From positions 248,001-312,000 of the IMG/VR virus record IMGVR_UViG_3300047476_002078: a stretch of DNA of 64,000 nt; one strand, given 5' to 3'. The translations under genes were made by a program, and so were the position numbers. Position 1 is the first letter of the stretch, and the number at the start of each line of letters is the position of its first letter. The notes beneath the pieces were generated by a model. The model was not told the origin of the DNA and did not search any database. It worked only from the letters and a program-made list of their open reading frames with translations. Below are positions 1,191 through 38,284 of the stretch, piece by piece.

Positions 1191-1455
1191 CTTCTAGCAA
1201 GTTACCTGCCCCCTCAGAGTCTCATAGGTTTAGTCTTTTGGAGAGTATAGTATTAAATACATCATCTCCCTAGCATCCTAATACAGGTGAGTTGCAATTT
1301 GATTATTCATAAAAAAATATTCAATTGCAATAGTATAGTTGAAAATTTTTTAAAATTTTTATTTTACGGTATTTTGTTAAATTATTTACGGTAATCTATA
1401 ACGTACTATGTTAAATTTAACAGAATTAATAACACGTATTGTTATTTTATTTTGC

Positions 1456-1530
1456 CATGAAGAACATGAAACATAAGCATGAGTTGTTTTTGTTATTTCT
1501 CCTACTACCGTTTTTTCTTCTTTAGCTTTT
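1456..1530. repeat. 75-bp exact direct repeat, copy 2 (340-bp period)
   Basis: Identical to 1116-1190. Confidence 0.95.
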
Positions 1531-1616
1531 TTAATGCTTAAAAAAGAAAGAGAGAGATAATATATAATATAATATAGTAAAACATATATTGTTCTAATTT
1601 GACTTATTTTGTCAGG

Positions 1617-1646
1617 ATAATAAATAAAGATTTTACGGTAAATCAA
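1617..1646 (-). promoter_or_regulatory. Putative leftward sigma70 promoter containing a TTTACCGTAAA box
   Basis: Minus strand TTGATT-18-TATTAT; perfect palindromic box at 1632-1642. Confidence 0.55.
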
Positions 1647-1718
1647 GCTACAGTAAATTAATTAATAAACCCGTGATTAGTTTTCTTTAAAGGAATATAA
1701 ATCGGAGGGATACTTATT

Positions 1719-2228
1719 GTGGTTAAGGATGAGTTAAAACGAACCATAAAGTTTGCTGAAGGTTTAGGATTAAAAATCCGTTTTGTGAAAAGAAACGGAG
1801 ATTATCATGGTTGTTATGTTCATCCTGATAAAAAACAAACAGGTGAAATAGAAATATGTCGTGGACCTAGAACGACAGTTACATTTCAAATAATAACCCT
1901 TTTGCATGAAATAGGGCATCATTTAGATTATACGGAAAGGTTAAAGATTCCTGACGCATACTGCAAGGTAGGGGATAATTCAACCCCTAAGTGGGCAAGG
2001 AAAGCTATCTTTAATGCAGAGAAAAGGGCTGTAGGCTTCGGAGAACAGCTTTATTGGACTTTGATGCTGAAGATACCTTTTTGGAAAGTTAAAAAAGAAT
2101 TGGATACTGATATTTACATATATCGTCATTTTTATATTTATGGTGATTATCCTACAGGTAAAGCTATCGCAGAGTACCAAAAAAGATGGGATAAGAAAAA
2201 AAAGAATTCACTTCTTTACCGTAAATAA
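1719..2228 (+). CDS. Zn metallopeptidase-like protein (ImmA/IrrE-type HExxH)
   Basis: TLLHEIGHH motif with downstream AEKRA; GGAGG RBS before GTG. Confidence 0.65.
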   Translation: MVKDELKRTIKFAEGLGLKIRFVKRNGDYHGCYVHPDKKQTGEIEICRGPRTTVTFQIITLLHEIGHHLDYTERLKIPDAYCKVGDNSTPKWARKAIFNAEKRAVGFGEQLYWTLMLKIPFWKVKKELDTDIYIYRHFYIYGDYPTGKAIAEYQKRWDKKKKNSLLYRK

Positions 2229-2239
2229 AAATACAATCT

Positions 2240-2268
2240 TTGACTTACCGTAAAATCGACTTTAACCT
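2240..2268 (+). promoter_or_regulatory. sigma70 promoter with operator-like box in the spacer
   Basis: TTGACT-17-TAACCT; CTTACCGTAAA at 2244-2254 and a perfect box at 2215-2225. Confidence 0.65.
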
Positions 2269-2308
2269 TATTCCTCAAAAGTTTAACAACACTAAGGAGA
2301 GTGTTCTT

Positions 2309-2665
2309 ATGCTCAAGAAGGCAGATAGACTAAAAATTGAAAAACTTATGAAAGCTGAAATTGTTTCCCTTCAGGAACAATTGAATAGCATTGAAATTCA
2401 ACCCTCTTCAAACTCTGGAGATAGTGCAGACATGAGTGCTTCACTGTACGACGAGCACGCAGCTATTTTAATGAAAGAAAGGTTGTCTAAAAAAATTCAC
2501 GAGTACAAACAAGCATTAGCAAGAATCAATGACTCTGATTTTGGTATTTGTGAAGAAACTGGAGAACCTATCGAAGTAAAGAGACTTTTAATGGTTCCTA
2601 CCACTCGATTGTCAATTGAGGCTCAACAAAGATTAGAAAGCGAAAAAAGAAACTTTTACAGATGA
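2309..2665 (+). CDS. dksA: DksA/TraR family RNA polymerase-binding protein (single-Cys type)
   Basis: GDSADMSA coiled-coil tip (DxxD); ALARI...FGICEETGEPIEVKRL..VPTTRLSIEAQ; AAGGAG RBS favours ATG 2309. Confidence 0.85.
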   Translation: MLKKADRLKIEKLMKAEIVSLQEQLNSIEIQPSSNSGDSADMSASLYDEHAAILMKERLSKKIHEYKQALARINDSDFGICEETGEPIEVKRLLMVPTTRLSIEAQQRLESEKRNFYR

Positions 2666-3315
2666 ATCAACCTAGAGCTTTCCATTTTTTGAATATGTTT
2701 ACGGATAATTGCCCTCCGTGCATGATCTTTTATGGGAAAAATGAAGGTGATAAAAAAATCATATTTGAAGAATTTTTCAAAAACGATGAGATTCATTTTT
2801 TTGACAAACCTAAACTGGATGAATTGTTAGAAATAAAAAAATGGATTTTTTTAAAACCTGCATCTAGGTATAAAGTTATCTTTATTAAAAAAGCTGATTT
2901 TATATCAAAAGAAGCCTCAAATTTTTTGCTGAAAATAATTGAAGAATCCCCAGATTACGTTCGATGGGTCATATCCACAGATTCATTGAATATTTTAGGA
3001 GCTTTGAAATCTCGAAGTTTTTTAATACCTTTCACAGAAGAAGAAAAAAATTTAGACGAGTTAGAAGGGAAGATTTTCGATATTTTAAAATCACGTTTGT
3101 ACTGCAATGCTTACAAATATTTATTGGATATTAAAAAAGCCGAATACTCTGAAGAAGAGTTAAAGCAAAAATACCTAGATATTTGTAATGTCTTGATTAA
3201 ATTTTACGCTAATCATAGTAAAAAACTTCATCTTATACAAAAAGCTAAAAACATTATTGATAAAAATGTTCGATCTGAAACAATTTTAAAAACCCTTTTT
3301 ATTCAGGTGCTTTAA
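2662..3315 (+). CDS. holB: DNA polymerase III delta'-like clamp loader subunit
   Basis: YKVIFIKKADFISKEASNFLLKIIEESP...ILGALKSRS matches the HolB pattern (A.NaLLK.lEEP...i.SRC). Confidence 0.7.
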   Translation: MNQPRAFHFLNMFTDNCPPCMIFYGKNEGDKKIIFEEFFKNDEIHFFDKPKLDELLEIKKWIFLKPASRYKVIFIKKADFISKEASNFLLKIIEESPDYVRWVISTDSLNILGALKSRSFLIPFTEEEKNLDELEGKIFDILKSRLYCNAYKYLLDIKKAEYSEEELKQKYLDICNVLIKFYANHSKKLHLIQKAKNIIDKNVRSETILKTLFIQVL

Positions 3316-4262
3316 TGAATTTTTCAGAGTTTAAAGACCAAGATAATTTTGATTTTAAAGTTTATGTTTTAAATGGAGAGGAAGAACTATACAAAGTTTT
3401 AGCTAAAGAAAAAATCAGAGATTCTTTTAAGACTTTGGAAATAGATTATGTTGATTCAGAATTAGAAGTTTCAGAGTTTTATTCCAAAATAGACTCGTCT
3501 GATTTATTTCCTCATCCTAAATTATTTTACATAAATAATACTAGCAACAACTTATCAAAACAAAAACAGTTTTGGAGTTACGTAAAAAGTTCAGACAGTG
3601 AAAGCATTTATATAATCAATTCTTTAAAAGAAAAAGTACCGACTGAAATTAAATCTATAGAAATTAAATGTGATAAGATTAAAGACTCTCAAAAAGACGT
3701 ATGTAAAGCGGTAGGTGAAATAGCTCAAAGTTTAGGTATTGCAATATCGGTTACAGACTTACCGATATTTTATTCTCTATATAAAAATAATTTATTTGCT
3801 ATCTACCAAGAATTAAAAAAATGTAAAACTTATTTGGATTCTAAAAAAACTTCTTATTTAGAATCCAAGGACATTTTTAAAATTGTTAGCCCTGCACTAG
3901 AAAAAGACCCGTTCATTTTTGCTAACAACTTTATGCACCGTAAATTAAAATCTTGTATAGCTAACCTACCAAACGAATCGGATTTTATACCTCAGTTTGG
4001 TAACATCTTTAATACTGCCGAGAAAATTTTAGTTTATAAATCAGCCAAACTATCAAAAATGAGTGACGATGAAATTTGTAAAAAATACGAGATAAATCCT
4101 TTTTATCTCAAATACAATTTATTGTCTGTTGAAAAAATGTGGAGTGTTAAAGAACTGTCTGAATTAATGATAGAAATTGAGAGTATTAATTGCAAAATTA
4201 GACGTTTTAATTTTACGGTAAAAGAGGCTATACTTAACCTCGTTTTTCAGTATTGTAAGTAA
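3315..4262 (+). CDS. holA: DNA polymerase III delta-like clamp loader subunit
   Basis: VYVLNGEEELY N-terminus, SDLF..KL, QELKK, INPFY; adjacent to the holB-like gene. Confidence 0.65.
   Translation: MNFSEFKDQDNFDFKVYVLNGEEELYKVLAKEKIRDSFKTLEIDYVDSELEVSEFYSKIDSSDLFPHPKLFYINNTSNNLSKQKQFWSYVKSSDSESIYIINSLKEKVPTEIKSIEIKCDKIKDSQKDVCKAVGEIAQSLGIAISVTDLPIFYSLYKNNLFAIYQELKKCKTYLDSKKTSYLESKDIFKIVSPALEKDPFIFANNFMHRKLKSCIANLPNESDFIPQFGNIFNTAEKILVYKSAKLSKMSDDEICKKYEINPFYLKYNLLSVEKMWSVKELSELMIEIESINCKIRRFNFTVKEAILNLVFQYCK
4206..4234 (+). promoter_or_regulatory. Putative promoter with a perfect TTTACGGTAAA box, upstream of the 4273-nrdAB-ligA genes
   Basis: TTTAAT-17-TATACT; box at 4212-4222 starts the spacer. 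Confidence 0.45.
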
Positions 4263-4272
4263 AGAGGAAAAC

Positions 4273-4962
4273 ATGGAATTAGAGAAAAAAGATATAGAGA
4301 TACTTTTAGCAGATGAATATTTTCCTGCCTCAAAATATTTAGGTGAAGGTTTCAATAATTGGTATTATCACGAACATTTAGTACAATCTGAAAAGAAGAT
4401 GCAGGTTTTTGTAAACGGTCACACTCATAATTTACCTATTATAAGCCGATCAATTATTTTTAAATGGTTAATGCCGCAAAAACCTTGCTTATACTCCGAA
4501 GAGGATTTTTACAATGACTTAGATAGAAAAGCAGGTATCTATCGTCTTTCTGTTGGAGAAAAAATCTGTATCTCGGAAAAAGAACTTAAAGAAATCGCAA
4601 AAGGGTATGTAAAAGTAGATAATGATTACTTAAAAAAGTTACAAGAGTTAGTGGAAAAATCATTCACTTTTTATTCAATAAAAATACCTATCGTGAATAT
4701 TCGTCTTGATGAAATACCTGATTCCTCTTTTAATCATCTTTACGAAATCCATACAGGAAGCTGGGTTTCTAAAATAAAAGAGATAGAAGAACAGCAAAAA
4801 GAATCACAAGAAAAAGCTAAAATTAAATCATTACTCCAAGTTAAAGACACTTTGAGTTCTTTTCCTGATTATCTTTCGATTTTGAAAGACTTAGTATCTG
4901 GAAAAATTTCTATAAATGAAGTCGAATCAAAACATGTTGGAATTTTTGTAAAGGGAATTTAA
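4273..4962 (+). CDS. Hypothetical protein
   Basis: 229 aa; GAGG RBS. Confidence 0.7.
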   Translation: MELEKKDIEILLADEYFPASKYLGEGFNNWYYHEHLVQSEKKMQVFVNGHTHNLPIISRSIIFKWLMPQKPCLYSEEDFYNDLDRKAGIYRLSVGEKICISEKELKEIAKGYVKVDNDYLKKLQELVEKSFTFYSIKIPIVNIRLDEIPDSSFNHLYEIHTGSWVSKIKEIEEQQKESQEKAKIKSLLQVKDTLSSFPDYLSILKDLVSGKISINEVESKHVGIFVKGI

Positions 4963-4964
4963 TT

Positions 4965-7274
4965 ATGTACGTTGTAAAAAGAAATGGTAAAAAAGAAGAA
5001 GTTAGATTTGATAAAATTCTCCAAAGAGTAAAAGCTTTCACTTCAGACTTAATTGTTGAACCTGTAAGTGTTTCTCAAAAAGTTGTAGCAGGTTTGCATG
5101 AAGGTATCACAACAAAAGCTATAGATAATTTATTAGCTGAAACTGCCTCTGTTTTAGCCAGTGAGCATCCTGACTATGCAAAACTAGCTGCCAGAATAGC
5201 GGTAAGTTCTCTACACAAAGAAACTACTACTTTTTACCAAACTATGAAAATGCTCTATAAAGAGGGTTACATTTCAGATGATTTTATCCAAGTAGTTAAA
5301 CAAAATGGAACTGTTATTGAGTCTGCTATTAAGTACGATAGAGATTTTGATTTTGATTATTTCGGATACAAAACTTTAGAAAAATCATACCTGTTGAAAA
5401 TTAACGGGAAAATTGTTGAAAGACCTCAACATTTATTCATGAGAGTAGCTATCGGTGTTTGTGGTTCAGACTTAGATAAAGTTTTTGAGTTATACGATCT
5501 AATGTCACAAGGATACTACACTCATGCCACGCCTACTTTATTTAATGCTGGGACTAAAAGACCTCAGATGTCATCTTGCTTCTTAATTTCTATGGAAGAT
5601 GATTCTATTGACGGTATTTATAACACTCTTAAAGAGTGTGCCTTAATCTCTAAACATGCTGGAGGCATTGGTCTTCATGTTCATAATGTAAGAGCACAAG
5701 GTTCTCATATCAAGGGAACTAATGGGACTTCAAATGGGATTATTCCTATGTTGAAAGTTTTTAACGAGACTGCTAGGTACGTGGACCAAGGTGGCGGAAA
5801 AAGAAAAGGGTCTATTGCAATTTATATTGAACCTTGGCACGCAGACATTGAAGCCTTTCTCGATCTTAAAAAGAACACAGGAAAAGAAGAATTCAGAGCA
5901 CGGGATTTATTTTTAGCCTTATGGGTTCCTGATCTTTTCATGAAGAGAGTAGAGGCAGATCAAGATTGGTCTTTAATGTGTCCAAACGAGTGTCCTGACC
6001 TATCTGATTCTGTTGGCGATGCTTTTGAAAAACTTTATACAAAGTATGAAAAAGAAGGAAAGGTTAGAAAAACTATTAAAGCTAGAGAAATTATGATGAG
6101 AATCATGGAGTCTCTTTCTGAAACAGGGGTTCCTTATATTTTATTCAAAGATGCTGCTAATTTGAAATCTAACCAACAAAATATCGGTGTGATTAAATCT
6201 TCAAATCTTTGTACAGAAATTTTGGAAGTATCAACTCCAGAAGAAACTGCCGTTTGTAATTTAGCTAGTATCTGTCTCCCTAAGTTTATCGTGGAAAAGA
6301 AAGGTAAAAAGTATTTCGATTTTGATAAGCTTATTGAGGTTGTTAAGGTTTCTACTAGAAATCTTAATTTTGTTATCGACAAAAACTTTTACCCTACGGA
6401 AAAAACAAAACGCTCTAACATGAGACACAGACCTATTGGAATCGGTGTTCAAGGGTTAGCAGACGTATTTTACGCTTTGGGGTATGCTTACGATTCCCAA
6501 GAAGCTAAAGAATTGAATAAAGAAATTTTTGAGGCAATGTATTTCGGAGCGTGTACTTCATCAATGGAGCTTGCAAAAGAACACGGTGCTTACGAAACAT
6601 TTCAAGGCTCACCTGCTTCTCAAGGCAAATTACAGTTTGATTTATGGGGTGTAAATCCTTCTGAGAAATACGATTGGAATTCTCTTAAAGAAGAAATTAA
6701 GCAACATGGGATGAGAAACTCGTTACTAATAGCTCCCATGCCTACAGCTTCCACTTCTCAAATTTTTGGTAATACTGAAGCTTTTGAGCCAGTAACATCT
6801 AACATTTATAAGCGTCAGACTCTTGCAGGTGAATTTATTGTTGTTAATAAATATTTAGTTCGTGATCTTCAAAAATTAAATCTTTGGAATGGTGTTATTA
6901 GAGACAAGATTATTTCAGAAAATGGTTCGGTTCAAAATATTCCAGAGATTCCTGCTAATGTTAAAGAGGTTTATAAAACTGTTTGGGAAATGTCTCAAAA
7001 AGTTATTATTGATTTAGCCGCAGATAGAGGTCCATTTATTTGTCAATCTCAGTCAATGAATCTTTACTTTGCTAAACCTAACTTTGGAGCAATGAATTCA
7101 GCGTTGTTCTACGGATGGAAAAAAGGTCTTAAAACTGGAAGTTACTACACAAGATCACGTCCAGCGGTAGATGCAGTTAAAGTGACAACAAAGATTGAAG
7201 AAAAAGTTCAACAAGCTGAAGCTTTAGTTTGCTCACTTGAAAATCCTGAAGCTTGTGAGGCTTGTGGGTCATGA
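4965..7274 (+). CDS. nrdA: Ribonucleotide reductase class Ia alpha subunit with ATP cone
   Basis: VVKRNG ATP cone, HATPTLFNAG, QMSSCFL, SNLCTEI, LIAPMPTAST, GLKTGSYY, C-terminal CEAC. Confidence 0.97.
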   Translation: MYVVKRNGKKEEVRFDKILQRVKAFTSDLIVEPVSVSQKVVAGLHEGITTKAIDNLLAETASVLASEHPDYAKLAARIAVSSLHKETTTFYQTMKMLYKEGYISDDFIQVVKQNGTVIESAIKYDRDFDFDYFGYKTLEKSYLLKINGKIVERPQHLFMRVAIGVCGSDLDKVFELYDLMSQGYYTHATPTLFNAGTKRPQMSSCFLISMEDDSIDGIYNTLKECALISKHAGGIGLHVHNVRAQGSHIKGTNGTSNGIIPMLKVFNETARYVDQGGGKRKGSIAIYIEPWHADIEAFLDLKKNTGKEEFRARDLFLALWVPDLFMKRVEADQDWSLMCPNECPDLSDSVGDAFEKLYTKYEKEGKVRKTIKAREIMMRIMESLSETGVPYILFKDAANLKSNQQNIGVIKSSNLCTEILEVSTPEETAVCNLASICLPKFIVEKKGKKYFDFDKLIEVVKVSTRNLNFVIDKNFYPTEKTKRSNMRHRPIGIGVQGLADVFYALGYAYDSQEAKELNKEIFEAMYFGACTSSMELAKEHGAYETFQGSPASQGKLQFDLWGVNPSEKYDWNSLKEEIKQHGMRNSLLIAPMPTASTSQIFGNTEAFEPVTSNIYKRQTLAGEFIVVNKYLVRDLQKLNLWNGVIRDKIISENGSVQNIPEIPANVKEVYKTVWEMSQKVIIDLAADRGPFICQSQSMNLYFAKPNFGAMNSALFYGWKKGLKTGSYYTRSRPAVDAVKVTTKIEEKVQQAEALVCSLENPEACEACGS

Positions 7275-7429
7275 GAACTTTAAATATCCAAATACTGTTT
7301 TTACTTTCGTTATTTGTTATTTATTTCGCAACAGTGTTGCTATTACCTATGGCAACACTTACCGAAAAGCAGTCTCATCAAATGTTTCAAACAATTATAA
7401 AAGCAACAGAGGTTAATAATGAGCAATAA
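7271..7429 (+). CDS. Possible 52-aa membrane microprotein between nrdA and nrdB
   Basis: ATGA overlap with the nrdA stop; MRTLNIQILFLLSLFVIYFATVLLLPM... hydrophobic helix; below the ORF track cutoff. Confidence 0.4.
   Translation: MRTLNIQILFLLSLFVIYFATVLLLPMATLTEKQSHQMFQTIIKATEVNNEQ
7333..7359. other. 10-bp stem-loop in the nrdA-nrdB interval
   Basis: agtgttgcta-ttaccta-tggcaacact. Confidence 0.6.
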
Positions 7430-8342
7430 ATATTCCATCTTTCCAATTAAAAAACAAAAATTATGGGAAGCTTTTAAAAATCACGAGAAAACATTTTGGA
7501 CAGCCGAAGAGTTAGATTTTGGTGCAGATTTAACAGATTTAAAAAAACTCAATCAAGACGAATTACATTTTCTTAAATATGTTTTGGCTTTTTTTTCCCA
7601 ATCAGACGGAATAGTTAATGAAAATTTAGCAATCAGGTTTTATAAAGACGTAGATATTCCAGAAGCAAGAGCTTTTTATTCTATGCAAATTTTAATCGAA
7701 ACAATTCATGCTGAAGTGTATGGATTGTTAATTGAAACCTATGTTGCAGATGAAGCAGAAAAAGATAAATTGTTCAACGCTATCTCAGAGATACCTGTAA
7801 TTAAGAAAAAGGCTGAATGGGCATTAAAATGGCTATCTTCAAAAGCCTCTTTCGCAGAAAGATTAATTGCTTTTGCCGTAGTTGAAGGAATATTTTTCTC
7901 AGGCTCATTTTGTTCAATCTATTGGCTAAGAAAAAGAGGGTTGTTGCCCGGACTAGCTGCCGCAAATGATCTAATCGCAAGAGATGAAGGATTACATTGG
8001 AACTTTGCAGTTCTTCTTTATCAAGAGATGGGGCTTAAAGTTGAAAAAGATGTTTTTGAAAAAATTGTAAGAGAGGCAGTAGAAATAGAAAAAGATTTTA
8101 TCTGTGATGCTTTACCTGTTAGTCTTATTGGAATGAATAAAGACTTGATGGCTCAATACATAGAATATACTGCCGATAGAGTCAGTCAAAATTTTGGATT
8201 TGGTAAGCTATATAATGTAGAAAACCCTTTCGATTTTATGCAGCTTATTGATATGGAAATTAAAACAAATTTCTTTGAAGCGAGAGTTACAAGCTATCAA
8301 AAACCTATGGATAGGGACCTTGATTTTGACTCTGATTTCTAA
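7419..8342 (+). CDS. nrdB: Ribonucleotide reductase class Ia beta subunit
   Basis: FWTAEE, DGIVNENL, ETIHAEVY (radical Tyr), VEGIFFSGSF, RDEGLH, TNFFE.RV..YQ. Confidence 0.97.
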   Translation: MSNKYSIFPIKKQKLWEAFKNHEKTFWTAEELDFGADLTDLKKLNQDELHFLKYVLAFFSQSDGIVNENLAIRFYKDVDIPEARAFYSMQILIETIHAEVYGLLIETYVADEAEKDKLFNAISEIPVIKKKAEWALKWLSSKASFAERLIAFAVVEGIFFSGSFCSIYWLRKRGLLPGLAAANDLIARDEGLHWNFAVLLYQEMGLKVEKDVFEKIVREAVEIEKDFICDALPVSLIGMNKDLMAQYIEYTADRVSQNFGFGKLYNVENPFDFMQLIDMEIKTNFFEARVTSYQKPMDRDLDFDSDF

Positions 8343-8354
8343 GAGGGATAAAAA

Positions 8355-10217
8355 ATGTTGATTAAAACTCCAGAAGAATATGTAGAACTTTTAAGACGCT
8401 ATTCTCATCAATATTACAATTTAGGTGAGCCTGAAGTAACTGATTCAGAATTTGATGAGCTAAAAGATGAATTTAAAAGTTTATACCCCGATCACGCTTA
8501 TTTTAAAGAAGTTGGGATTGTTCCTTCTGACCCAAATTTTAAAAAAGCGAATCATGAAATACCGATGGGTTCCCTCGATAAAGCCTTAAATGAACAAGAA
8601 ATGAGAGAATGGGCTGTAAAATCCACCTCTGATTTAACTTTTTGCGTTTCTGAAAAAATAGACGGCTTGAGCGTTAGTGTTACATATTGGAACGGTCATT
8701 TGAGACAAGCTATAACTAGAGGGGATGGGGTTGTTGGAGATGATATAACAAGAAATGTCTCAAACATGAAAATTCCCAAAAAGCTCCCACTAAATTTAAC
8801 CCTAACTCTTAGAGGGGAAATATTTTTAAGGAAATCAATTTTTTCTCAAAAGCATAGCTCAACTAAAGCAAACCCTAGAAACGCCGCAGTAGGTCTAACT
8901 AAAAGACTAGATGGGGTCGGAACAGAAGACTTGGATATATTTTTTTATGACATTATAAGTAATGTTACTTTTAAAGAAGAGATTCAAAAATTTGAATATA
9001 TAAAAAATACTCTGAATTTAAACACCCCTTTTTATAAAAAAGTTTCTTTAGAAGAATTGATAAAAATTCATGAAGATTATGAAAGTTTAAAAAGGCAGGA
9101 ACTCGACTACGAAATTGACGGTTTAGTTGTCAAAGTTAATTCTTTATCAAAGCAAGAAATTTTAGGAGAATTAAATTTAATACCTAAATTTGCAGTTGCT
9201 TATAAATTTGAATCACAAAAAGCAAATACTGTTCTTGAGGATGTTATTTGGCAAGTAGGGCGAACAGGTTATGTTACTCCTTTAGCTCAGGTTAAACCTA
9301 TAGAAGTTGGAGGAGTTACTATTAGCAATGTCACTCTTCACAATATTGCTGAAATGGGAAGATTGGGAGTTAAAAAAGGTCAATTAATAGAGGTTAAAAG
9401 AAGCGGTGACGTTATTCCTAAAATAACAAAAGTTGTTTCTGAAAAAGGTCAAGAAATAAAAATACCTACAAACTGCCCTGAATGTGAAAGCGTTTTAGAT
9501 AATAACGGTATCCAATTACGTTGCTTAAATAATGACTGTCCTGCCAAAATGACAAAAGGTTTACTTCACTGGTTAGAAACATTAGATATTTTAAATTTTG
9601 GTGAAAGGTTAGTTGAGCAACTGGAAGAAAGAGGATTTATTAAAGAGCCTTCAGACTTTTATAAATTAAGACCAGAGCACATAGCGAGTATCGAAGGAAG
9701 AGGTCAAGTAATAGCACAGAAAGTTTTAGATGAATTACATTCAAAGAAAAAAATTACTCTAGGAACTTTTTTATCTGCTTTATCAATACCTAATTTATCA
9801 ATTAAGACAGGTAAACTTTTAGCTTCCGAATTTGGAAATCTGGAAGCCGTTCAACTTGCTTCTGAAGAACAGCTTGAAAAAATCCAAGGTATCGCAAAAA
9901 AGTTAGCAAAAATTATCGTTCAGGGGTTGAAAGAGAAAGAAAAGGTTATAAAAAACTTAATGCAGCATGTTGAGATTGTTGAAAGTGAGTTTGTTTCTAC
10001 CAAACTTGGTGGAAAAACTTTTTGCTTTACAGGTTTCAGAGATAAATCCCTAGAACAGAAAATTGAAACAAACGGTGGAAAAGTTGTATCTGGTGTTACA
10101 AGTAAATTGAATTACTTGGTTTCAGTCGGGGCACAGAGTACAAAAACTTCAAAAGCTAAAGAGCTTGGAGTTTCTGTAATATCTCCAGATGATTTAAAAA
10201 ACTTGCTAGACTTCTAA
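8355..10217 (+). CDS. ligA: NAD-dependent DNA ligase
   Basis: EKIDG adenylation motif, TRGDG..GDDIT, NPRNAA, QVGRTG, CPEC Zn finger, C-terminal BRCT. Confidence 0.95.
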   Translation: MLIKTPEEYVELLRRYSHQYYNLGEPEVTDSEFDELKDEFKSLYPDHAYFKEVGIVPSDPNFKKANHEIPMGSLDKALNEQEMREWAVKSTSDLTFCVSEKIDGLSVSVTYWNGHLRQAITRGDGVVGDDITRNVSNMKIPKKLPLNLTLTLRGEIFLRKSIFSQKHSSTKANPRNAAVGLTKRLDGVGTEDLDIFFYDIISNVTFKEEIQKFEYIKNTLNLNTPFYKKVSLEELIKIHEDYESLKRQELDYEIDGLVVKVNSLSKQEILGELNLIPKFAVAYKFESQKANTVLEDVIWQVGRTGYVTPLAQVKPIEVGGVTISNVTLHNIAEMGRLGVKKGQLIEVKRSGDVIPKITKVVSEKGQEIKIPTNCPECESVLDNNGIQLRCLNNDCPAKMTKGLLHWLETLDILNFGERLVEQLEERGFIKEPSDFYKLRPEHIASIEGRGQVIAQKVLDELHSKKKITLGTFLSALSIPNLSIKTGKLLASEFGNLEAVQLASEEQLEKIQGIAKKLAKIIVQGLKEKEKVIKNLMQHVEIVESEFVSTKLGGKTFCFTGFRDKSLEQKIETNGGKVVSGVTSKLNYLVSVGAQSTKTSKAKELGVSVISPDDLKNLLDF

Positions 10218-10219
10218 CC

Positions 10220-28425: not shown

Positions 28426-28453
28426 TTTCATCTCACATAACGGAGGTATCTTT

Positions 28454-29804: not shown

Positions 29805-29815
29805 ACGGGGGATTA

Positions 29816-30304: not shown

Positions 30305-30864
30305 TGCAACAAGGTATTGAAAAAGATTTAGAAGTTTCCTTAGAATGGACTCCTAATCCCAAGACTTTAAAATTAGTTGTAAATAAAACACTTTTAAGCA
30401 AAGGTATCAGTAATTCAAAAAGTTTACAAGAAGCTTCCGAAAAATCACCTTTGGCAGAAAAATTATTTTCTATTGATGGTGTTAAAGGTGTAATGATTGC
30501 AAAAGATTTTATTACTGTAACAATTGAAGGTTACGAAGTTTATGAAATTTACGACAGAATTAAATCTTGTATTATAGAAGTCATTAACTCAGGTTCCGAA
30601 TTAGTTTACGCATTTTTTAATAAAAAGGAACTTACTGGCATTGAACTTGAGATTGATACTATTTTACAAACTCATATCAAACCTGCGGTAGCAAAAGATG
30701 GAGGAGACATTAATTTTGAGAGCTTTGAAGACGGTGTGGTATATGTATCTCTTCACGGTTCTTGCAACGGTTGTCCTAGCTCTAAAATAACTTTAAAAAA
30801 CGGAGTCGAAACTCTTTTAAAAGAAAAAATACTCTCTGTTAAAGAAGTCGTATCTATAAGCTAA
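30304..30864 (+). CDS. nfuA: NfuA/NFU1 Fe-S cluster carrier
   Basis: TPNP.TLK, SPLAEKLF.IDGV, KDGGDI, GSCNGCPSS.ITLK.GVE. Confidence 0.92.
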   Translation: MQQGIEKDLEVSLEWTPNPKTLKLVVNKTLLSKGISNSKSLQEASEKSPLAEKLFSIDGVKGVMIAKDFITVTIEGYEVYEIYDRIKSCIIEVINSGSELVYAFFNKKELTGIELEIDTILQTHIKPAVAKDGGDINFESFEDGVVYVSLHGSCNGCPSSKITLKNGVETLLKEKILSVKEVVSIS

Positions 30865-31368
30865 ATGGCAAAATTAGAATTAGATCAAGTAGCTTTGTTA
30901 GATTTTAAAGAAATCATTCCTAATCTTTGTTTGCAATTAAAAACAAAAAGAAATGGTAAGTTATTATCTATTTTAAATTCAATAAAAATAGACGGGCATA
31001 AGTTTAAGTTTGTTTATAATGAAAACTCTTTTTATAAAATTTATGTTAAGTGCCCCAAGTGTAAAGAGCCTAAATTAAAACTCTACAAATTAGATGATGT
31101 TTATTGGTGTAGTTCCTGCCATAGAGTTGTTAAGAAGAAAAATAAAAGACGTTCAACAGTTTACTCCAAGTATGTCAGACCTTTAAAACTACTAAAAGAA
31201 ATCGAAGATGCTCTATTTACCGATAATATAACTGAAGGCAAGAGACGAAAATTGGAAATAAAAGCTGAAAAATTAAGAAAAATCATACCGATATATATCT
31301 ATGAACTAAGAGAAAAAGTCTTAAAAAGTATTCAGAAAGATAAAGATATTGGATTATCTGACAAATAA
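30865..31368 (+). CDS. Basic Zn-ribbon protein (possible DNA binder)
   Basis: CPKC.....KLY......CSSCH. Confidence 0.65.
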   Translation: MAKLELDQVALLDFKEIIPNLCLQLKTKRNGKLLSILNSIKIDGHKFKFVYNENSFYKIYVKCPKCKEPKLKLYKLDDVYWCSSCHRVVKKKNKRRSTVYSKYVRPLKLLKEIEDALFTDNITEGKRRKLEIKAEKLRKIIPIYIYELREKVLKSIQKDKDIGLSDK

Positions 31369-32944: not shown

Positions 32945-32973
32945 ATAAACCTTTTACGGTATATAATTGTAGC

Positions 32974-34739: not shown

Positions 34740-36121
34740 TAAACAATATCTTCAAAAGTAACTGTTCTTCCCTTTTCTAAAGGGTAGTTTCTATTTGTTG
34801 GTTTATCCGCTGTAATTATAGGGGAAGAATTACCAACTCTCTCAGATCGAGAGTTCCAAGGGTCTATAGGTGACTCAACAGATTGATTAAGATTTGTATT
34901 GTTACCTTCTATTCCAACTGAATAAACAATGTCTCCTGCGTCTAATTGTTGCAGAGTAAACATTTGCTGAAATATTGCACCTCTTTGACCAACATAATTT
35001 ATACTACCTACAGAAAATCTTTCTCCTGAAGGTCTAACAATTATATCTCTCTTATTCAACATAGGTGAAGGACCTGTCCAAGTCTCCCAAGTGTAATTAA
35101 CTCTAATACCGATCTCAGTTAATTCTACATTTTTTTCAGCGTCAGGAGGGGCAATAATTACATCGAAAGGACCTTCATATCCACCAACTATGTTAGTACC
35201 GTAACAAATGGGGCAATCTGAAGGAGAATTTTGGTGAACGTCAGAAAAATCATCACAAAGTTGACCATTCCATTTTCTGATAAAAACTTTAACTCTTTCT
35301 CCGCCTTGTTCAAGAATCCAACGGTTTCTTCTTACAGCTTCCTTCCACATCCAATCCGTTTTTTCTTGTTCGTGTAAATTTACAGATTTGCAGAATTCCA
35401 ATTCAGATTCTACTAGCTGACCTTGCGAATTTATCCCTACCGTGGTCAATTTATAAAAAATTCTATTGTGAAGATTCGCTCTTATTCTATTACTGTTTAT
35501 GTAATAGCTGACAGTTAAAGCTCCTGCATTATTTAACGGTAATCTTGGAGGGATTAATTTTTCTGTAGCTGGGTCTAATATTTGCTGGCTGATTAGAGTT
35601 ATCTCTCCAGTTAATGCTGATATTTTATGTATCGGAACCTCTAACAACCCGTTCCCATCTCCGTTATCAACTCTAACAATCACGTCTTTTATTTCAGCTA
35701 GATTGCCTTCATAAAGAGACTTTCCTTGATCTTCTATATTTTTCACAATTGGGAAAAATTTGGTCTTAAAACGCCACTCTTTTTGAGGATTGATGCCTCT
35801 TTCTAAATTTTGAACTTCTTCATTAGTTATAAGGCTATTTGTGGTTTTATCACGATACACTCCGCTACTTAAAGGTTCTGAATTAACCTTGTGGTACGGA
35901 CCTGCTTCAGAATCAAAACTTCTATATAAATTAACTCCAAGGATGGAAAAAGCAGTATTTTCGGGAAGTATGCTAGGGTTGTCCCATCTAACGTCTAATA
36001 CTCCGTTTAAATAAGGTGAAATCACAAAAACATTAATTGGAGGCTTTGGTAATAACGAGGAAGGCTTCCTTTCCGGAATTTCAAATGGTTTATTAGTTTG
36101 GTAAACTTGGTTGAATTTCAT
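34736..36121 (-). CDS. Putative neck/head-closure protein with an FN3-like N-terminus
   Basis: P.PP.NV...V.W......GVNLYRS; GGERVKVFIRK..G..C.....CPICYGT..VGGY. Confidence 0.5.
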   Translation of the reverse strand: MKFNQVYQTNKPFEIPERKPSSLLPKPPINVFVISPYLNGVLDVRWDNPSILPENTAFSILGVNLYRSFDSEAGPYHKVNSEPLSSGVYRDKTTNSLITNEEVQNLERGINPQKEWRFKTKFFPIVKNIEDQGKSLYEGNLAEIKDVIVRVDNGDGNGLLEVPIHKISALTGEITLISQQILDPATEKLIPPRLPLNNAGALTVSYYINSNRIRANLHNRIFYKLTTVGINSQGQLVESELEFCKSVNLHEQEKTDWMWKEAVRRNRWILEQGGERVKVFIRKWNGQLCDDFSDVHQNSPSDCPICYGTNIVGGYEGPFDVIIAPPDAEKNVELTEIGIRVNYTWETWTGPSPMLNKRDIIVRPSGERFSVGSINYVGQRGAIFQQMFTLQQLDAGDIVYSVGIEGNNTNLNQSVESPIDPWNSRSERVGNSSPIITADKPTNRNYPLEKGRTVTFEDIVY

Positions 36122-36461
36122 TTTTCTCTAACTTTTCAATGTGTTCATGACACTCAAAAATTTTATCAATCAGATATTGTTTTATTTCAGTTATTTCTTT
36201 TTCACTTGCAAATAAATTAGAAACTTCATCTTCAAAAACATACTCTTTATAAAAGAAACCAATTTGAGAATTAGCGAAGAGTCCATATATCTTATCGCCG
36301 TCAATAACCTCACACTTAATGAAAACTCCGCAATCACATTTCTGATATTTTCTTAGATTACTAAAATCAATAGGTTTTCTATGATCTTTATGAAAATAAA
36401 CGCCTAATTTAAAAAATGCCGAACTAATAAATATAAACAGCCTCGATAAAATATTTTTCAT
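36093..36461 (-). CDS. Hypothetical protein
   Basis: 122 aa, in a minus-strand operon. Confidence 0.55.
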   Translation of the reverse strand: MKNILSRLFIFISSAFFKLGVYFHKDHRKPIDFSNLRKYQKCDCGVFIKCEVIDGDKIYGLFANSQIGFFYKEYVFEDEVSNLFASEKEITEIKQYLIDKIFECHEHIEKLEKNEIQPSLPN

Positions 36462-36488
36462 TTATAACCCTTAATTATTATCGAGAAA

Positions 36489-38210
36489 TTAAAACTGTTT
36501 CCTTGCAATAGGCTTTCCATGAACAACTAAGTCATAAAACATACTTTTGGTCGGTTGCATTTTTTGGGTCATTTCTGGAAACATACAAAAAAGATTTGTT
36601 TTTGCTCTTGTGACTGCAACATAAAAAAGCCTCAATTCTTCAAAAAATTCTTCGTTTTTGAAAGATGGGAAGACTCCATCATAAATACCCATGACAAAGG
36701 TAGTATCCCATTCCAAACCTTTAGATTGGTGAATGGTTGTCAACACAACTCCATTACTCTCTTTTTCTAAACTGTCTGAAAATATTATATCAGATATGAA
36801 TTTTTTAAGATCGGGATGTGATCTAGCAAAGTCCAAAAATTTTTTTACTGCTACATCTCTGCTAGTATCTGGATGATCTCTCTGCACTACAGGCACGTAA
36901 AAATTTTCAACATTTTTTAAAAATTCTTTTGGGTCACTTGTTTTGAAAATATCTACTATTGGAGAAATTCCTCCATGGTTTACAGAGTTTATTCCACTTG
37001 AAATAGCGGTTTCAGCAAGTTTTTGAGCAGTAACTTTACCGACCTTGGGAATTAATCTAAAAATTCTAGCCCAAGCAATGATGTCTTTTTTATTAGTATA
37101 TGCTCGCATAAAACAAATAACATCTTGGATGTGCGAAGCTGTTAATAAATTTTGACCACTCCACACAGTAAAAGGTATTTTTAATTCAGCTAGTTTTAAT
37201 TGAAGTGTTTGGGAAATAAAATGTGATCTATACAAGACAGCCATAGAGTCAAAAGATTTACCTTGGTTTCTAAATTCCAAAATTTTCTGAGCTATATAAT
37301 TAACTTCATCCAAATAATTTCCAACTTTAACCAACTTAGCTTTTGGTGCATCGGGGTAATCCTTTACTGCAACAAGTTCAACTTTAGGACTATCAGGCAT
37401 ACCTGCTAATATACGATTGGCTACTTTTAGAACTTCCTGAGATGATCTGTAATTTACAGAAAGGGGATAATCCGTAACTCCTTCTTTTGACCAGTCGATG
37501 AACGATTCCAGTGATGCTCCACGGAAAGAATAAATTGACTGTGCTGCGTCACCGACAATAAAAAGGTTACGGTGTTTTTTAATAAGTTCTTTTGTAATCA
37601 TTGACTGAATTCCAGAGTTATCTTGAGCTTCATCAACAATCACTAATAAGTAATCAAGTGGGAAAAAATCTTTTTTCAGAAGGGTTAAAACATCTTCAAG
37701 CAAATCATCATAATCTTTAAGCTTATTTTTTACTTTAAACTCTTTATATTTTATTTCAACTTCTTTTAAAATAGGGTCATGATAAGGTTTTTGTAAATTA
37801 CGGTGATAACATAAAATTCCTGCTAAATCGCCCATTTGGTAAGAAAAATTTGAATAATCTTCTGTAATTGTTTTTAAAATATCTTGAACATCGTTATCGG
37901 TAATCAATGAATATGTAAGAACCTTAGATAGTAATTGGTGTGCAAAACTATGAAAAGTTCCTGCAAAAACTTTATCTGATTTTTCACCAATGATTTTACG
38001 GAGTCTTGTTTTAAGCTCTATTCCTGCTTTTTTAGTAAATGTTAGAGCTATAATTTTCTCAGGAGGGATACCGTTGTGAACTTCATAAGCGATTTTAGTG
38101 GTAATACATGAAGTTTTTCCTGAGCCTGCTCCTGCGACAACACGCACAATACCTTTGGGGGCGGTAACGGCAGAAAGTTGTTGGGAGTTTAAATGTTTTA
38201 ATAAGTTCAT
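36489..38210 (-). CDS. uvrD: UvrD/PcrA/Rep SF1A helicase
   Basis: AGAGSGKT, TFT.KA, GTFHS, VDEAQD, VGD..QSIYSFRGA, NYRS, TIHQSKGLEW, LFYVAVTRAK. Confidence 0.93.
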   Translation of the reverse strand: MNLLKHLNSQQLSAVTAPKGIVRVVAGAGSGKTSCITTKIAYEVHNGIPPEKIIALTFTKKAGIELKTRLRKIIGEKSDKVFAGTFHSFAHQLLSKVLTYSLITDNDVQDILKTITEDYSNFSYQMGDLAGILCYHRNLQKPYHDPILKEVEIKYKEFKVKNKLKDYDDLLEDVLTLLKKDFFPLDYLLVIVDEAQDNSGIQSMITKELIKKHRNLFIVGDAAQSIYSFRGASLESFIDWSKEGVTDYPLSVNYRSSQEVLKVANRILAGMPDSPKVELVAVKDYPDAPKAKLVKVGNYLDEVNYIAQKILEFRNQGKSFDSMAVLYRSHFISQTLQLKLAELKIPFTVWSGQNLLTASHIQDVICFMRAYTNKKDIIAWARIFRLIPKVGKVTAQKLAETAISSGINSVNHGGISPIVDIFKTSDPKEFLKNVENFYVPVVQRDHPDTSRDVAVKKFLDFARSHPDLKKFISDIIFSDSLEKESNGVVLTTIHQSKGLEWDTTFVMGIYDGVFPSFKNEEFFEELRLFYVAVTRAKTNLFCMFPEMTQKMQPTKSMFYDLVVHGKPIARKQF

Positions 38211-38284
38211 TAAAGAGGTTTCCGTAAATTGTTAATCAATACTTAGCTAATTTTAATAATACTTTGAGTTAAGGAAAAAAGTAA

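What the first reader, a model, noticed from the sequence alone, without database searches (positions are those of the whole stretch)
1362..38228. Candidate phage regulon: palindromic TTTAC-S-GTAAA box in sigma70 promoter spacers of replication/repair operons
Seen: perfect 11-bp odd palindromes TTTAC[C/G]GTAAA at 1632, 2215, 4212, 10227 and 25150. Near-matches lie at 1362, 1385, 1649, 2244, 10246, 19363/19375/19395, 28331/28346, 32953 and 38219. A rough estimate at ~30% GC gives about 0.1 perfect hits by chance in 64 kb. The box repeatedly sits on or just after a -35 hexamer: TTGACT-TACCGTAAA (dksA), TTGATT-TACCGTAAA (leftward promoter), TTGACT-TTACCGTAAA (sbcC C-half), TTGATAg-TTTACCGTAAA (recD2) and TTGCTACCGTAAA (ssb-ruvC-recA). 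Copies also lie before the nrdAB-ligA operon, clpX, uvrD and both 2OG islands. I saw none in the intergenic regions of the head genes. Inference: one dimeric regulator coordinates an SOS-like phage regulon, as a repressor or as a MotA/MerR-style activator. As I recall, the Bdellovibrio LexA box has the same TTAC/GTAA half-sites with N3 spacing, so a host factor is possible.
Basis: partly seen in the sequence, partly recalled or inferred. Interest (0 to 1): 0.85.

Follow-up and report, generated by a model that had tools for sequence, protein, structure and literature searches.

The report
Phage early-gene operator palindrome
A short DNA palindrome sits in front of the replication, repair and DNA-methylase genes of an uncultured 356-kb phage, and related phages carry different palindromes at the same promoters, so it is most likely the docking site of an unidentified, probably phage-encoded gene regulator.

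Summary
TTTACSGTAAA occurs 5 times perfectly (0.07 expected) and 14 times with at most 1 mismatch (2.2 expected). All five perfect copies lie within 150 bp upstream of a start codon. None lies in late-gene intergenic DNA. The window is part of a 356-kb jumbo-phage contig.

New evidence comes from related phages:
- In a relative with 90% nucleotide identity, the boxes are 94% conserved against 79% for other non-coding DNA.
- In more distant relatives with the same gene order, this box is absent. Other short palindromes occupy the same promoters: TTACWGTAA, TTTCCGGAAA, TTTCGGCGGAAA and TTAACATGTTAA. Each is enriched only in its own lineage.
- A second region of the same genome carries box pairs in front of C5-cytosine methylase genes.

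The box is therefore a functional DNA-level site read by a symmetric protein whose specificity differs between lineages. It marks an early/middle gene class that is wider than an SOS-like set. A repressor overlapping sigma70-type promoters is the most likely reading. It is not proven, and the regulator was not found. A host LexA-like factor is unlikely, because the half-site spacing is wrong and the motif changes by lineage. Several near-matches inside genes are at background level.

The parts
1632..1642 (.). Perfect box TTTACGGTAAA. It lies 82 bp upstream of the protease-like gene 1719-2228. Read leftward it follows TTGATT (1641-1646, minus strand).
   Evidence: In the 90%-identical relative L036 this copy is degraded while the neighbouring core at 1649 improves, which is site turnover.
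1363..1395 (.). Two box variants, 1363-1373 (2 mismatches) and 1385-1395 (1 mismatch), 22 bp apart in the 681-bp gene-free region
2215..2254 (.). Box pair upstream of the DksA-like gene: 2215-2225 perfect and 2244-2254 with 1 mismatch. The second overlaps the -35-like TTGACT at 2240-2245.
   Evidence: Both are conserved in L036. Sister phages L040 and L043 carry their own box overlapping TTG at the same promoter, and L044 has its box just 3' of TTGATTGAC.
4212..4222 (.). Perfect box inside the 3' end of gene 3315-4262, 56 bp upstream of the operon 4273-10217 (229-aa protein, nrdA, nrdB, NAD ligase). TATACT lies 6 bp downstream.
   Evidence: The codons are FNFTVK. In L038 the same codons read FNFPVS and encode that phage's own box. 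L042 and L044 also carry their box upstream of this gene.
10220..10256 (+). recD2 promoter region: TTGATA (10220-10225), perfect box 10227-10237 in the 17-bp spacer, TAAATT (10243-10248), and a second partial box ATTACGGT abutting the ATG at 10254
   Evidence: The layout of box 1, -10 element and box 2 next to an ATG is seen in L038, L040 and L043. In L042 the second box abuts an upstream ATG, which I infer to be the true start rather than the called GTG.
19362..19404 (.). Three box variants (19362, 19375, 19394) in the divergent region between the 2OG oxygenase gene (18807-19337, minus) and the SSB-like gene (19492-20160). 19394 overlaps TTGCTA-17-TATCAT. 19362 read on the minus strand gives TTTACG-18-TATAAT.
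   Evidence: Between 2 and 4 own-type boxes lie at this promoter in L038, L040, L042, L043, L044 and L045.
25145..25160 (+). TTGACT followed by perfect box 25150-25160, in the 24-bp gap before the GapR-like gene and the SbcC C-terminal half
   Evidence: TTGACT-18-TAAAAT
28331..28355 (.). Box pair (1 and 2 mismatches) at the 3' end of gene 28033-28395, upstream of 28454 and clpX (28623-29804)
32953..32963 (.). Box with 1 mismatch filling the 29-bp divergent gap between 32408-32944 (minus) and the 2OG oxygenase gene 32974-33597. It overlaps TTCATA-16-TATAAT.
38218..38228 (.). Weak variant GTTTCCGTAAA (2 mismatches) between uvrD (36489-38210, minus) and 38285-39547. Membership is doubtful.
1719..31368 (+). 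Rightward block of early/middle genes whose internal promoters carry the boxes. In order: protease-like, DksA-like, clamp-loader-like, nrdAB, ligA, recD2, HU-like, Lon, SSB-like, RuvC-like, RecA, SbcC/SbcD, PD-(D/E)XK nuclease, GapR-like, ClpX, NifU-like. 18145-19337 inside the span is on the minus strand.
   Evidence: Pfam and PHROG. The same gene order occurs in nine related contigs.

Best explanation
The box is the operator of a symmetric, probably dimeric, sequence-specific DNA-binding protein. That protein controls a class of early/middle genes of this jumbo phage: replication, recombination and repair, nucleotide supply, proteases and DNA methylases.

Shown:
- The site is strongly enriched.
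- It is confined to promoter-proximal DNA of the early region.
- It is under purifying selection.
- In sister lineages a different short palindrome replaces it at the same promoters.

Inferred:
- The reader protein is encoded by the phage and co-evolves with its sites.
- It acts mainly as a repressor. The promoter-proximal copy overlaps or follows a good -35 hexamer and fills the spacer, centred about 11-16 bp upstream of the best -10-like hexamer. Second copies cover the -10 and start region or lie 14-32 bp away. A bound dimer, or a pair of dimers, would therefore exclude host RNA polymerase.
- A plausible role is timed shut-off or feedback control of the early/middle programme.

My estimates for the separate steps are: protein-binding regulatory site 0.85, phage-encoded reader 0.65, net repressor 0.55.
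For: - Enrichment: 5 perfect against 0.07 expected, and 14 against 2.2 with at most 1 mismatch. TTAC-N1-GTAA is the top palindrome of the early 40 kb (10 against 1.05).
- Position: 5 of 5 perfect sites lie within 150 bp upstream of starts. Seven of 12 intergenic gaps in the first 40 kb hold a box-like copy and 0 of 14 in the late region do (my count from the listing).
- Selection against L036: 90.4% identity overall, 78.8% in non-coding DNA, 94.4% in boxes. Five of the six box changes lie in one pair that shows turnover.
- Selection between L040 and L043: boxes 96% against 70% for other upstream DNA.
- Lineage-specific replacement at the same promoters (recD2, SSB-like, dksA, the nrd operon, recA, protease-like), shown as observed against expected:
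  - TTTACSGTAAA: W 11 and L036 8, against 0.7 and 0.5
  - TTTACWGTAAA: L040 4 and L043 7, against 0.6
  - TTTCCGGAAA: L038 6, against 1.1
  - TTTCGGCGGAAA: L042 5 and L044 5, against 0.17, and 0-1 in all other phages
  - TTAACATGTTAA: L045 3, against 0

- DNA-level reading: the central base is C or G on the coding strand, and the slightly asymmetric L042/L044 box occurs in both orientations before plus-strand genes.
- Promoter overlap: TTGACT, TTGATA, TTGCTA and TTGATT are followed by the box with 17-18 bp spacers. The same layout is seen in L038 and L042 (my reading of the sequences).
- Extension within the same genome: box pairs lie upstream of C5-cytosine methylase genes in L206 (12 hits with at most 2 mismatches against 3.3 expected).
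- Precedent: the 12-bp palindrome GTTTAGCTAAAC is bound by the KorA helix-turn-helix dimer, a global repressor of plasmid RP4 (PMC2665229).
Against: - No candidate regulator was found. There is no HTH, RHH, S24, MerR, ParB or MotA hit among the window ORFs.
- The only lead, the 191-aa protein 26547-27122, was not borne out by a model and fold search.
- No transcription start sites are known. Sigma70-like consensus matches are no more frequent than in shuffled sequence (72 against 81, and 75 against 78), so the promoter assignments are inferences.
- Some boxes lack a recognisable -35 (4212, 1632 read rightward, L206). That would fit an activator.
- Half-site spacing differs between lineages (N1, N0, N2 or more). 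That is awkward for one rigid dimer.
- Two clade members, L039 and L041, show no palindrome.
- Box position relative to the -10-like hexamer varies by about 5 bp.
- Different motifs could reflect different hosts rather than a phage-encoded protein.
Confidence: 0.55

Rival explanations
1. The box is the site of a phage-encoded activator that defines a temporal class of 'middle' promoters. It would work like T4 MotA or Mu Mor/C in function, recruiting or re-aiming host RNA polymerase at the replication, repair and methylase genes.
For: - The box marks one functional and temporal gene class and is absent from late-gene intergenic DNA.
- Its centre sits at a fairly constant 11-16 bp upstream of -10-like hexamers (my reading).
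- Some promoters have a box but only a poor -35: 4212 (TTTAAT), 1632 read rightward, and L206 at 2080.
- Lineage-specific promoter codes are typical of phage-specific transcription factors.
Against: - Most box promoters keep near-consensus -35 hexamers, which an activator of this type would not need.
- Second copies cover the -10 and start region or abut the start codon, as at recD2 in four to five phages and at 32953. That placement is typical of repression.
- The palindrome differs from the asymmetric MotA box.
- No MotA or AsiA hit was found in the window.
Confidence: 0.2
2. A host-encoded regulator reads the box, either a LexA-like SOS repressor or another global factor. The different palindromes in related phages would reflect different hosts.
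For: - The gene set overlaps classical SOS and damage regulons: SSB-like, recD2, uvrD, nrdAB, ligase, sbcCD.
- LexA motifs are known to differ widely between phyla, and TTAC/GTAA half-sites occur in Bdellovibrio (N3) and in a Bacteroidetes LexA-like SOS regulator of Elizabethkingia (N5) (PMC8565304).
- The related phages differ in G+C content (32-51%), so they may have different hosts.
Against: - No LexA motif named in PMC8565304 has N1 or N0 spacing.
- recA itself has no intergenic box, and HU-Lon has none.
- The box also precedes methylase and 2OG oxygenase genes.
- A scan of 185,579 species genomes for tandem boxes returned heterogeneous hits: coding repeats, LacI-type operators and assorted others. 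The 60 flanking proteins showed no recurrent SOS or regulator family.
- Five motif types would need five unknown host factors, each acting at the same promoter positions.
Confidence: 0.15
3. The box is a core promoter element read directly by a phage-encoded sigma factor or RNA polymerase. It would not be an operator.
For: - Jumbo phages often carry their own transcription machinery with private promoter sequences that differ between relatives.
- The arm TTTAC resembles a -35 variant, and the consensus scan used one box in that way (TTTACG-18-TATAAT at 19372, minus strand).
Against: - Perfect two-fold symmetry in several independent lineages is not expected of a sigma or polymerase promoter.
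- Boxes occur in tandem at variable spacings of 13-32 bp and at 3 to about 190 bp from start codons.
- The arms in the other lineages (TTTCC, TTTCGG, TTAACA) do not resemble -35 elements.
- No RNA polymerase or sigma hit was found in the window or in the two large ORFs to its left.
Confidence: 0.06
4. The box has no role in transcription. It could be a chance or codon-driven pattern, or a site for another DNA transaction such as methylation or restriction, replication initiation or packaging.
For: - Some in-gene near-matches are explained by codons. The RuvC-like motif (V/I)(F/Y)R(K/R)NE gives TAC-CGT-AAA even in L043, whose own box is different.
- In-gene hits with at most 1 mismatch are only about twice the expectation.
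- In another group of phage contigs, clusters of the same sequence lie upstream of a recurrent 174-185-aa flanking protein that I read, unverified, as a small terminase subunit.
- The genome encodes several C5 methylases, and the box has a central CG.
Against: - Chance is excluded.
- Codon effects cannot explain intergenic copies or their conservation.
- The sites are spread over many promoters and are not clustered as at an origin or pac site.
- The L040/L043 and L045 versions have no CG.
- Placement at the same promoters across lineages points to gene control.
Confidence: 0.04

Closest known systems
KorA/KorB global repressor network of IncP plasmids RK2/RP4 (operators OA GTTTAGCTAAAC and OB TTTAGCGGCTAAA)
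   Same: - Very short perfect palindromes of 12-13 bp with T-rich and A-rich arms. One has an odd length with a central S.
- They recur at many operon promoters of one mobile element and coordinate its replication and maintenance genes.
- An HTH dimer reads the 12-mer in consecutive major grooves.
(PMC2665229; PMC11790492)
   Different: - The sequence is different.
- As I recall, KorA sites overlap the -10 and KorB sites lie upstream of the -35 or far away. Here the proximal box fills the spacer next to the -35.
- No KorA-like or ParB-like protein was found in the window.
- The element here is a phage, not a plasmid.
LexA SOS boxes, including Bdellovibrio TTAC-N3-GTAA and the Bacteroidetes LexA-like motifs
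   Same: - Palindromic operators lie in front of DNA-repair genes, often in tandem.
- The motif diverges between lineages.
- The half-sites TTAC/GTAA are shared.
(PMC8565304)
   Different: - The spacing is N1 here (N0 to N2 or more in relatives) rather than N3 to N10.
- No LexA/S24 gene was seen.
- recA lacks an intergenic box.
- The regulon includes methylases and oxygenases.
- The motif changes between closely related phages.
Phage T4 MotA/AsiA middle promoters
   Same: A phage-specific sequence near -30 marks a temporal class that includes replication and recombination genes, combined with a host-type -10 (from established knowledge).
   Different: - The MotA box is asymmetric and replaces the -35.
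- Here the element is a palindrome next to intact -35 hexamers, often duplicated and sometimes over the start site.
- No MotA or AsiA homologue was found.
Immunity regions of lambdoid and other temperate phages (CI/Cro-type repressors with private operators)
   Same: Related phages keep the promoter architecture but swap operator sequence together with repressor specificity (from established knowledge).
   Different: - Operators there are 14-17 bp and clustered at one control region.
- Here 10-12 bp sites are scattered over many operons of a large, apparently lytic genome.
Protease-repressor damage switches (Deinococcus IrrE/DdrO with the RDRM palindrome, ICEBs1 ImmA/ImmR, CBASS CapP/CapH)
   Same: - A palindromic operator precedes repair genes.
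- The first gene of the block, 1719-2228, is a small HExxH metalloprotease (HEIGHH).

   Different: - The protease match is weak: phrog_87 at E=5e-4, and fold search tops with SPRTN at E=0.11 while CapP scores E=1.1.
- There is no adjacent XRE repressor gene.
- The operator length and sequence are different.

Membership tests
LexA / SOS regulon | The operator matches a known LexA-binding motif in both half-sites and spacing | tested here: not met
   The box is TTAC-N1-GTAA. The LexA and LexA-like motifs quoted in PMC8565304 have N3 (Bdellovibrio), N5, N7, N8 or N10 spacing.
LexA / SOS regulon | A LexA-type repressor (wHTH plus S24 peptidase) is present and preceded by its own box | tested here: not met
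   No Peptidase_S24 or LexA_DNA_bind hit was found among about 65 window ORFs scanned. The rest of the 356-kb genome and the host could not be examined.
LexA / SOS regulon | Core SOS genes (recA, uvr, ssb) carry the box in their promoters | tested here: inconclusive
   The SSB-like gene carries it (3 copies). uvrD has only a 2-mismatch variant. recA has only in-gene near-matches that are partly codon-driven. Non-SOS genes such as C5 methylases and 2OG oxygenases also carry it.
T4 MotA-dependent middle promoters | An asymmetric MotA box centred at -30 replaces the -35 element | tested here: not met
   The element is a perfect palindrome next to -35-like TTGACT, TTGATA and TTGCTA.
T4 MotA-dependent middle promoters | MotA and AsiA homologues are encoded | tested here: not met
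   No such Pfam or PHROG hit was found in the window. The whole genome could not be tested.
MerR-type activation | The dyad is centred in an over-long 19-20 bp spacer | tested here: not met
   The spacers of the box promoters are 17-18 bp.
MerR-type activation | A MerR-family regulator gene is present | tested here: not met
   No MerR hit was found among the window ORFs.
KorA/KorB-type global repressor network of a mobile element | One short perfect palindrome is repeated at many operon promoters of the element | tested here: met
   About 10 promoter regions in the window plus 2 in L206 carry it.
KorA/KorB-type global repressor network of a mobile element | A KorA-like HTH dimer or a ParB-family KorB is encoded | tested here: not met
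   No such hit was found in the window. The remaining 290 kb or so could not be tested with these tools.
IrrE/DdrO, ImmA/ImmR and CapP/CapH protease-repressor switches | An M78-type (ImmA/IrrE) metalloprotease is present | tested here: inconclusive
   1719-2228 has an invariant HE.GHH motif and a weak phrog_87 'metallo-protease' hit (E=5e-4). It has no Pfam hit. The AlphaFold model has pLDDT 88.7. Best fold matches are SPRTN 6mdx (E=0.11) and CapP 7t5t (E=1.1).
IrrE/DdrO, ImmA/ImmR and CapP/CapH protease-repressor switches | An adjacent XRE-type HTH repressor gene is present | tested here: not met
   The 681-bp region upstream holds no HTH-like ORF. Neighbouring small ORFs have no HTH hit.

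The most novel reading that the evidence does not exclude
A whole clade of uncultured huge phages may run its replication, repair and DNA-modification programme through a private, fast-evolving regulator-operator pair. The 10-12 bp palindrome changes in half-site sequence and also in half-site spacing between lineages, while the promoter architecture stays fixed. The divergence might then be driven by competition between co-infecting phages, as a form of transcriptional heteroimmunity in lytic jumbo phages.
Probability: 0.15. Interest if true: 0.8.

Novelty: new member of a known kind. Interest (0 to 1): 0.55.

Why it matters
Almost nothing is known about how uncultured huge phages schedule their genes.

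- This box gives a concrete, testable regulon for one 356-kb phage.
- The series of different palindromes at the same promoters in related phages gives a ready-made comparative set. It can be used to find the regulator and to read out how its DNA specificity is encoded.
- The box flags which genes belong to the early/middle class without any expression data. These include the methylases, the 2OG oxygenases and the Lon/ClpX-associated blocks.
- If the factor is phage-encoded, the pairs are candidate orthogonal repressor-operator parts.

Tried and rejected
1. Close relatives in GenBank phages: none by DNA. The capsid and RecD2 proteins gave only distant matches.
2. IMG/VR scan with TTGACTTTACCGTAAA: 29 loci, which I estimate is about the chance number. 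Second boxes in those loci are coding FYGK/FTVK repeats. Uninformative.
3. IMG/VR single-protein scans around the boxes found only the source contig.
4. Literature search for the motif string returned only primers and vector sequences.
5. Regulator hunt in the window with Pfam and PHROGs found no HTH, RHH, S24, MerR or ParB family.
6. The 115-aa divergent ORF 690-1037 has no PDB or atlas lead.
7. The SSB-like protein is too conserved to be the specificity-changing factor and has an acidic SSB-type tail.
8. The DksA-like protein looked hyper-divergent only because I used a wrong frame. After correction it is an ordinary DksA-like protein.
9. The basic zinc-ribbon protein 30865-31368 gave only unnamed clusters.
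10. The 191-aa protein 26547-27122 had an atlas lead to XRE HTH (score 0.67). The model (pLDDT 78) found no fold match (best E=2.6).
11. The IrrE/ImmA idea for the protease-like gene gave weak and ambiguous fold matches.
12. Genome-collection scan for tandem boxes to look for a host regulon gave heterogeneous hits with no recurrent flanking family.
13. RNA-level reading. I rejected it for three reasons: a 5-bp stem with a 1-nt loop cannot fold, box pairs are not complementary in L038, and the boxes are used in both orientations. The window has no Rfam or tRNA hit, and the SSB-like leader fold is not significant (z=-1.2).
14. Avoidance of the half-site in late genes: the low late-region count is explained by composition.

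Full report
Source and setting. The window is positions 248001-312000 of IMGVR_UViG_3300047476_002078, a 355,874-bp viral contig. It is a jumbo phage with about 32% G+C. It has no close relative among GenBank phages.

- DksA-like, 2309-2665
- clamp-loader-like genes
- nrdA, nrdB and NAD ligase
- recD2
- an HU-like gene and Lon
- two 2OG oxygenases on the minus strand
- a RuvC-like gene and RecA
- an SbcC N-terminal half, SbcD and a PD-(D/E)XK nuclease
- a GapR-like gene and an SbcC C-terminal half
- ClpX and a NifU-like gene
- a third 2OG oxygenase
- UvrD

The 'ssb' gene (19492-20160) has no family hit. It is highly conserved in relatives and ends in an acidic tail, which fits an SSB. Structural genes follow from about 38 kb.

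The observation. TTTACSGTAAA occurs five times perfectly, against 0.07 expected, and 14 times with at most one mismatch, against 2.19 expected. TTAC-N1-GTAA is the most enriched palindrome of the first 40 kb, at 10 against 1.05. All five perfect copies and 8 of the 14 lie within 150 bp upstream of a start codon, a zone that makes up 17.1% of the window (P=1.4e-4 and 8e-4). By my count, seven of the 12 intergenic gaps in the first 40 kb hold a box-like copy and none of the 14 gaps in the late region does.

Sites fully inside genes with at most one mismatch are only about twice the expectation (8 against 4.07, P=0.043). The internal hits at 10656, 14637, 20784, 21748 and 40006 are therefore at about background. 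The copies at 2215, 4212 and 28331 lie at the 3' ends of genes, immediately upstream of the next gene. One finding stays unexplained. The half-site CCGTAAA is three times over-represented deep inside early-region genes (13 against 4.1). Its scarcity in late genes is explained by composition alone.

Evidence of selection. RecD2 homologues define a clade of huge-phage contigs with the same gene order: protease-like, dksA, clamp loader, nrd, ligase, recD2, HU, Lon, SSB-like, RuvC-like, RecA, SbcCD and nuclease. In L036, which is 90.4% identical in DNA, non-coding positions are 78.8% identical and box positions 94.4%. Five of the six box changes lie in the 1632/1649 pair. There one copy decays while its neighbour gains the core, which is site turnover.

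Lineage-specific replacement. The more distant relatives have 43-56% RecD2 identity and 39-51% G+C. They lack this box but carry other short palindromes at the same promoters:
- L040 and L043: TTACWGTAA
- L038: TTTCCGGAAA
- L042 and L044: TTTCGGCGGAAA, nearly symmetric and used in both orientations
- L045: TTAAC(A/T)TGTTAA

A motif-by-phage count over about 20 kb per phage is essentially diagonal. Each phage is enriched 5- to 30-fold in its own motif, and the other motifs stay close to expectation. Between the sister phages L040 and L043, box columns are 96% identical against 70% for the rest of the upstream DNA.

The architecture is conserved even where the sequence is not:
- Before recD2, one box lies in the promoter spacer and a second abuts the ATG in W, L038, L040 and L043. 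L042 fits if an upstream ATG is the true start.
- Before the SSB-like gene there are two to four boxes, the proximal one directly after a TTG-type hexamer.
- The box at 4212 lies inside codons FNFTVK. In L038 the same codons read FNFPVS and spell that phage's own box.

L039 and L041 have no enriched palindrome and show only short WACATC repeats at these promoters.

Extent of the regulon. A scan of IMG/VR for tandem boxes hit the source contig twice. One hit is the dksA pair in the window. The other, L206, lies outside the window. There a perfect box and a one-mismatch box sit in the divergent gap before a C5-cytosine methylase gene. A second pair precedes two further C5 methylase genes (12 hits with at most 2 mismatches in 7.4 kb against 3.3 expected). 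In the window the box also precedes 2OG oxygenases and the clpX to nifU block. HU-Lon has none, and recA has only in-gene near-matches. Some of those are plain codon effects. The conserved RuvC-like motif (V/I)(F/Y)R(K/R)NE gives TAC-CGT-AAA even in L043, whose own box is different. The set is therefore better described as an early/middle gene class than as an SOS regulon.

Mechanism. Recognition is at the DNA level and symmetric. The central base is C or G with respect to the coding strand. The asymmetric L042/L044 variant occurs in both orientations. The palindrome cannot form an RNA hairpin.

The promoter-proximal copy follows or overlaps -35-like hexamers and fills a 17-18 bp spacer:
- TTGACT-17-TAACCT, my own reading of the sequence at dksA
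- TTGATA-17-TAAATT
- TTGCTA-17-TATCAT
- TTGACT-18-TAAAAT

Partner copies lie 13-32 bp away or over the -10 and start region. This layout would block RNA polymerase, so I favour a repressor.

The caveats are real. Consensus promoter matches are not enriched over shuffles in this AT-rich DNA. TTG next to the box is only modestly enriched over all boxes (16 of 50 against 0.20). Some boxes lack a -35. An activator that defines a middle class therefore remains a serious rival.

The 17-18 bp spacers argue against a MerR-type mechanism. The palindrome and the intact -35 hexamers argue against a MotA-type one.

Who reads it. No regulator family was detected among the window ORFs. The first gene of the block (1719-2228) is a small HExxH metalloprotease. 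Its link to ImmA/IrrE/CapP-type anti-repressor proteases is weak: phrog_87 at E=5e-4, SPRTN at E=0.11 and CapP at E=1.1. No XRE gene lies next to it. A language-model lead to an XRE-like C-terminus in the 191-aa protein 26547-27122 was not confirmed by modelling and fold search.

A host factor cannot be excluded, but it is disfavoured for three reasons:
- The LexA motifs listed in PMC8565304 all have N3-N10 spacing.
- Five motif types would need five unknown host proteins acting at the same promoter positions.
- A scan of one genome per bacterial species for tandem boxes gave a heterogeneous mix of coding repeats, LacI-type operators and unrelated contexts, with no recurrent flanking family.

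Comparison with known systems. In format and logic the nearest known system is the KorA/KorB network of IncP plasmids. That network uses 12-13 bp perfect palindromes (GTTTAGCTAAAC and TTTAGCGGCTAAA) repeated at many operon promoters of one mobile element. An HTH dimer reads the 12-mer. The swap of operator sequence with a conserved architecture recalls the immunity regions of temperate phages. Membership in any of these families is not shown, because the defining protein was not found.

Verdict. The finding is a real and well-supported cis-regulatory element that defines a phage regulon. Its SOS/LexA framing is not. The finding is a new member of a known kind of system. Its useful comparative handle is the set of lineage-specific operator variants. 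Interest is moderate.

Noticed in passing
window 1038-1718 (repeats 1111-1190 and 1451-1530): A 681-bp gene-free region lies between divergent gene blocks. It holds an 80-nt direct repeat (98% identical). Each copy contains a 22-aa hydrophobic ORF, MKNMKHKHELFLLFLLLPFFLL. Relatives also have long, repeat-rich, gene-free DNA at this spot: L044 has about 2 kb with GGATACCTCATAG four times, and L043 has a long hairpin. It could be a replication origin or a control hub.
   Followed up: partly
window 10220-10256, 32940-32976, 25145-25187: Three box promoters appear to give leaderless or nearly leaderless mRNAs. The -10-like hexamer ends 5-6 nt before the ATG of recD2 (10254) and of the 2OG oxygenase gene (32974), with no Shine-Dalgarno sequence. 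At the GapR-like gene the likely start at 25185 is about 10 nt after TAAAAT. Most other genes have a clear AGGAG.
   Followed up: partly
L206 (same contig, outside the window), 1166-2029 minus, 5239-6177 and 6174-7253: Three C5-cytosine DNA methylase genes lie in a 7-kb stretch. Two of their promoter regions carry box pairs. A DctP-like solute-binding protein gene lies next to them.
   Followed up: partly
window 22214-23377 and 25466-26122: SbcC is split into an N-terminal ATPase half and a C-terminal half. They are separated by sbcD, a PD-(D/E)XK nuclease gene and a GapR-like gene, with a box promoter in between.
   Followed up: no
window 2309-2665: The DksA-like protein keeps the acidic coiled-coil tip (GDxxDxS) but has only one of the four zinc-finger cysteines. 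The L039 orthologue keeps all four. The ORF listing starts it too early, at 2240. The likely start is the ATG at 2309, behind AAGGAG.
   Followed up: partly
window, first 38.3 kb, inside genes (e.g. 3938, 10660, 12611, 21752, 21779): The half-site CCGTAAA / ACCGTAA is 3-4 times more frequent deep inside early genes than in codon-preserving shuffles (13 against 4.1, and 12 against 3.3). It is mostly in the sense orientation. It may reflect extra weak sites or a CGT-AAA codon-pair bias.
   Followed up: partly
window 12983-15355 and 28623-29804: The phage encodes both a full-length Lon protease, which is 66-71% identical across the clade and is its best-conserved protein, and a ClpX-like unfoldase. 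This is unusual cargo and could tie proteolysis to the regulatory circuit.
   Followed up: no
window 19405-19491 and the same regions of L038-L045: The SSB-like gene has a leader of about 100 nt in every relative, with short conserved blocks such as GATTCCGAC and GACTAAC in L042 and L044. This recalls autogenous control of T4 gene 32. The W leader alone does not fold better than shuffles (z=-1.2).
   Followed up: partly
window 52157-52168 and 54078-54089: ATAAATTTTTAA occurs in two late-gene intergenic gaps. It is a candidate late-promoter element but is not significant on its own (3 against 1.24 expected).
   Followed up: partly
L167, L173, L174, L176, L189, L198, L200, L202, L203, L208, L213 (IMG/VR): An unrelated group of phage contigs has clusters of TTTACSGTAAA-like repeats upstream of a recurrent 174-185-aa protein. 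Its sequence looks to me like a small terminase subunit, but this was not checked against any family library. The same palindrome is thus used in other phages, perhaps for another purpose.
   Followed up: no
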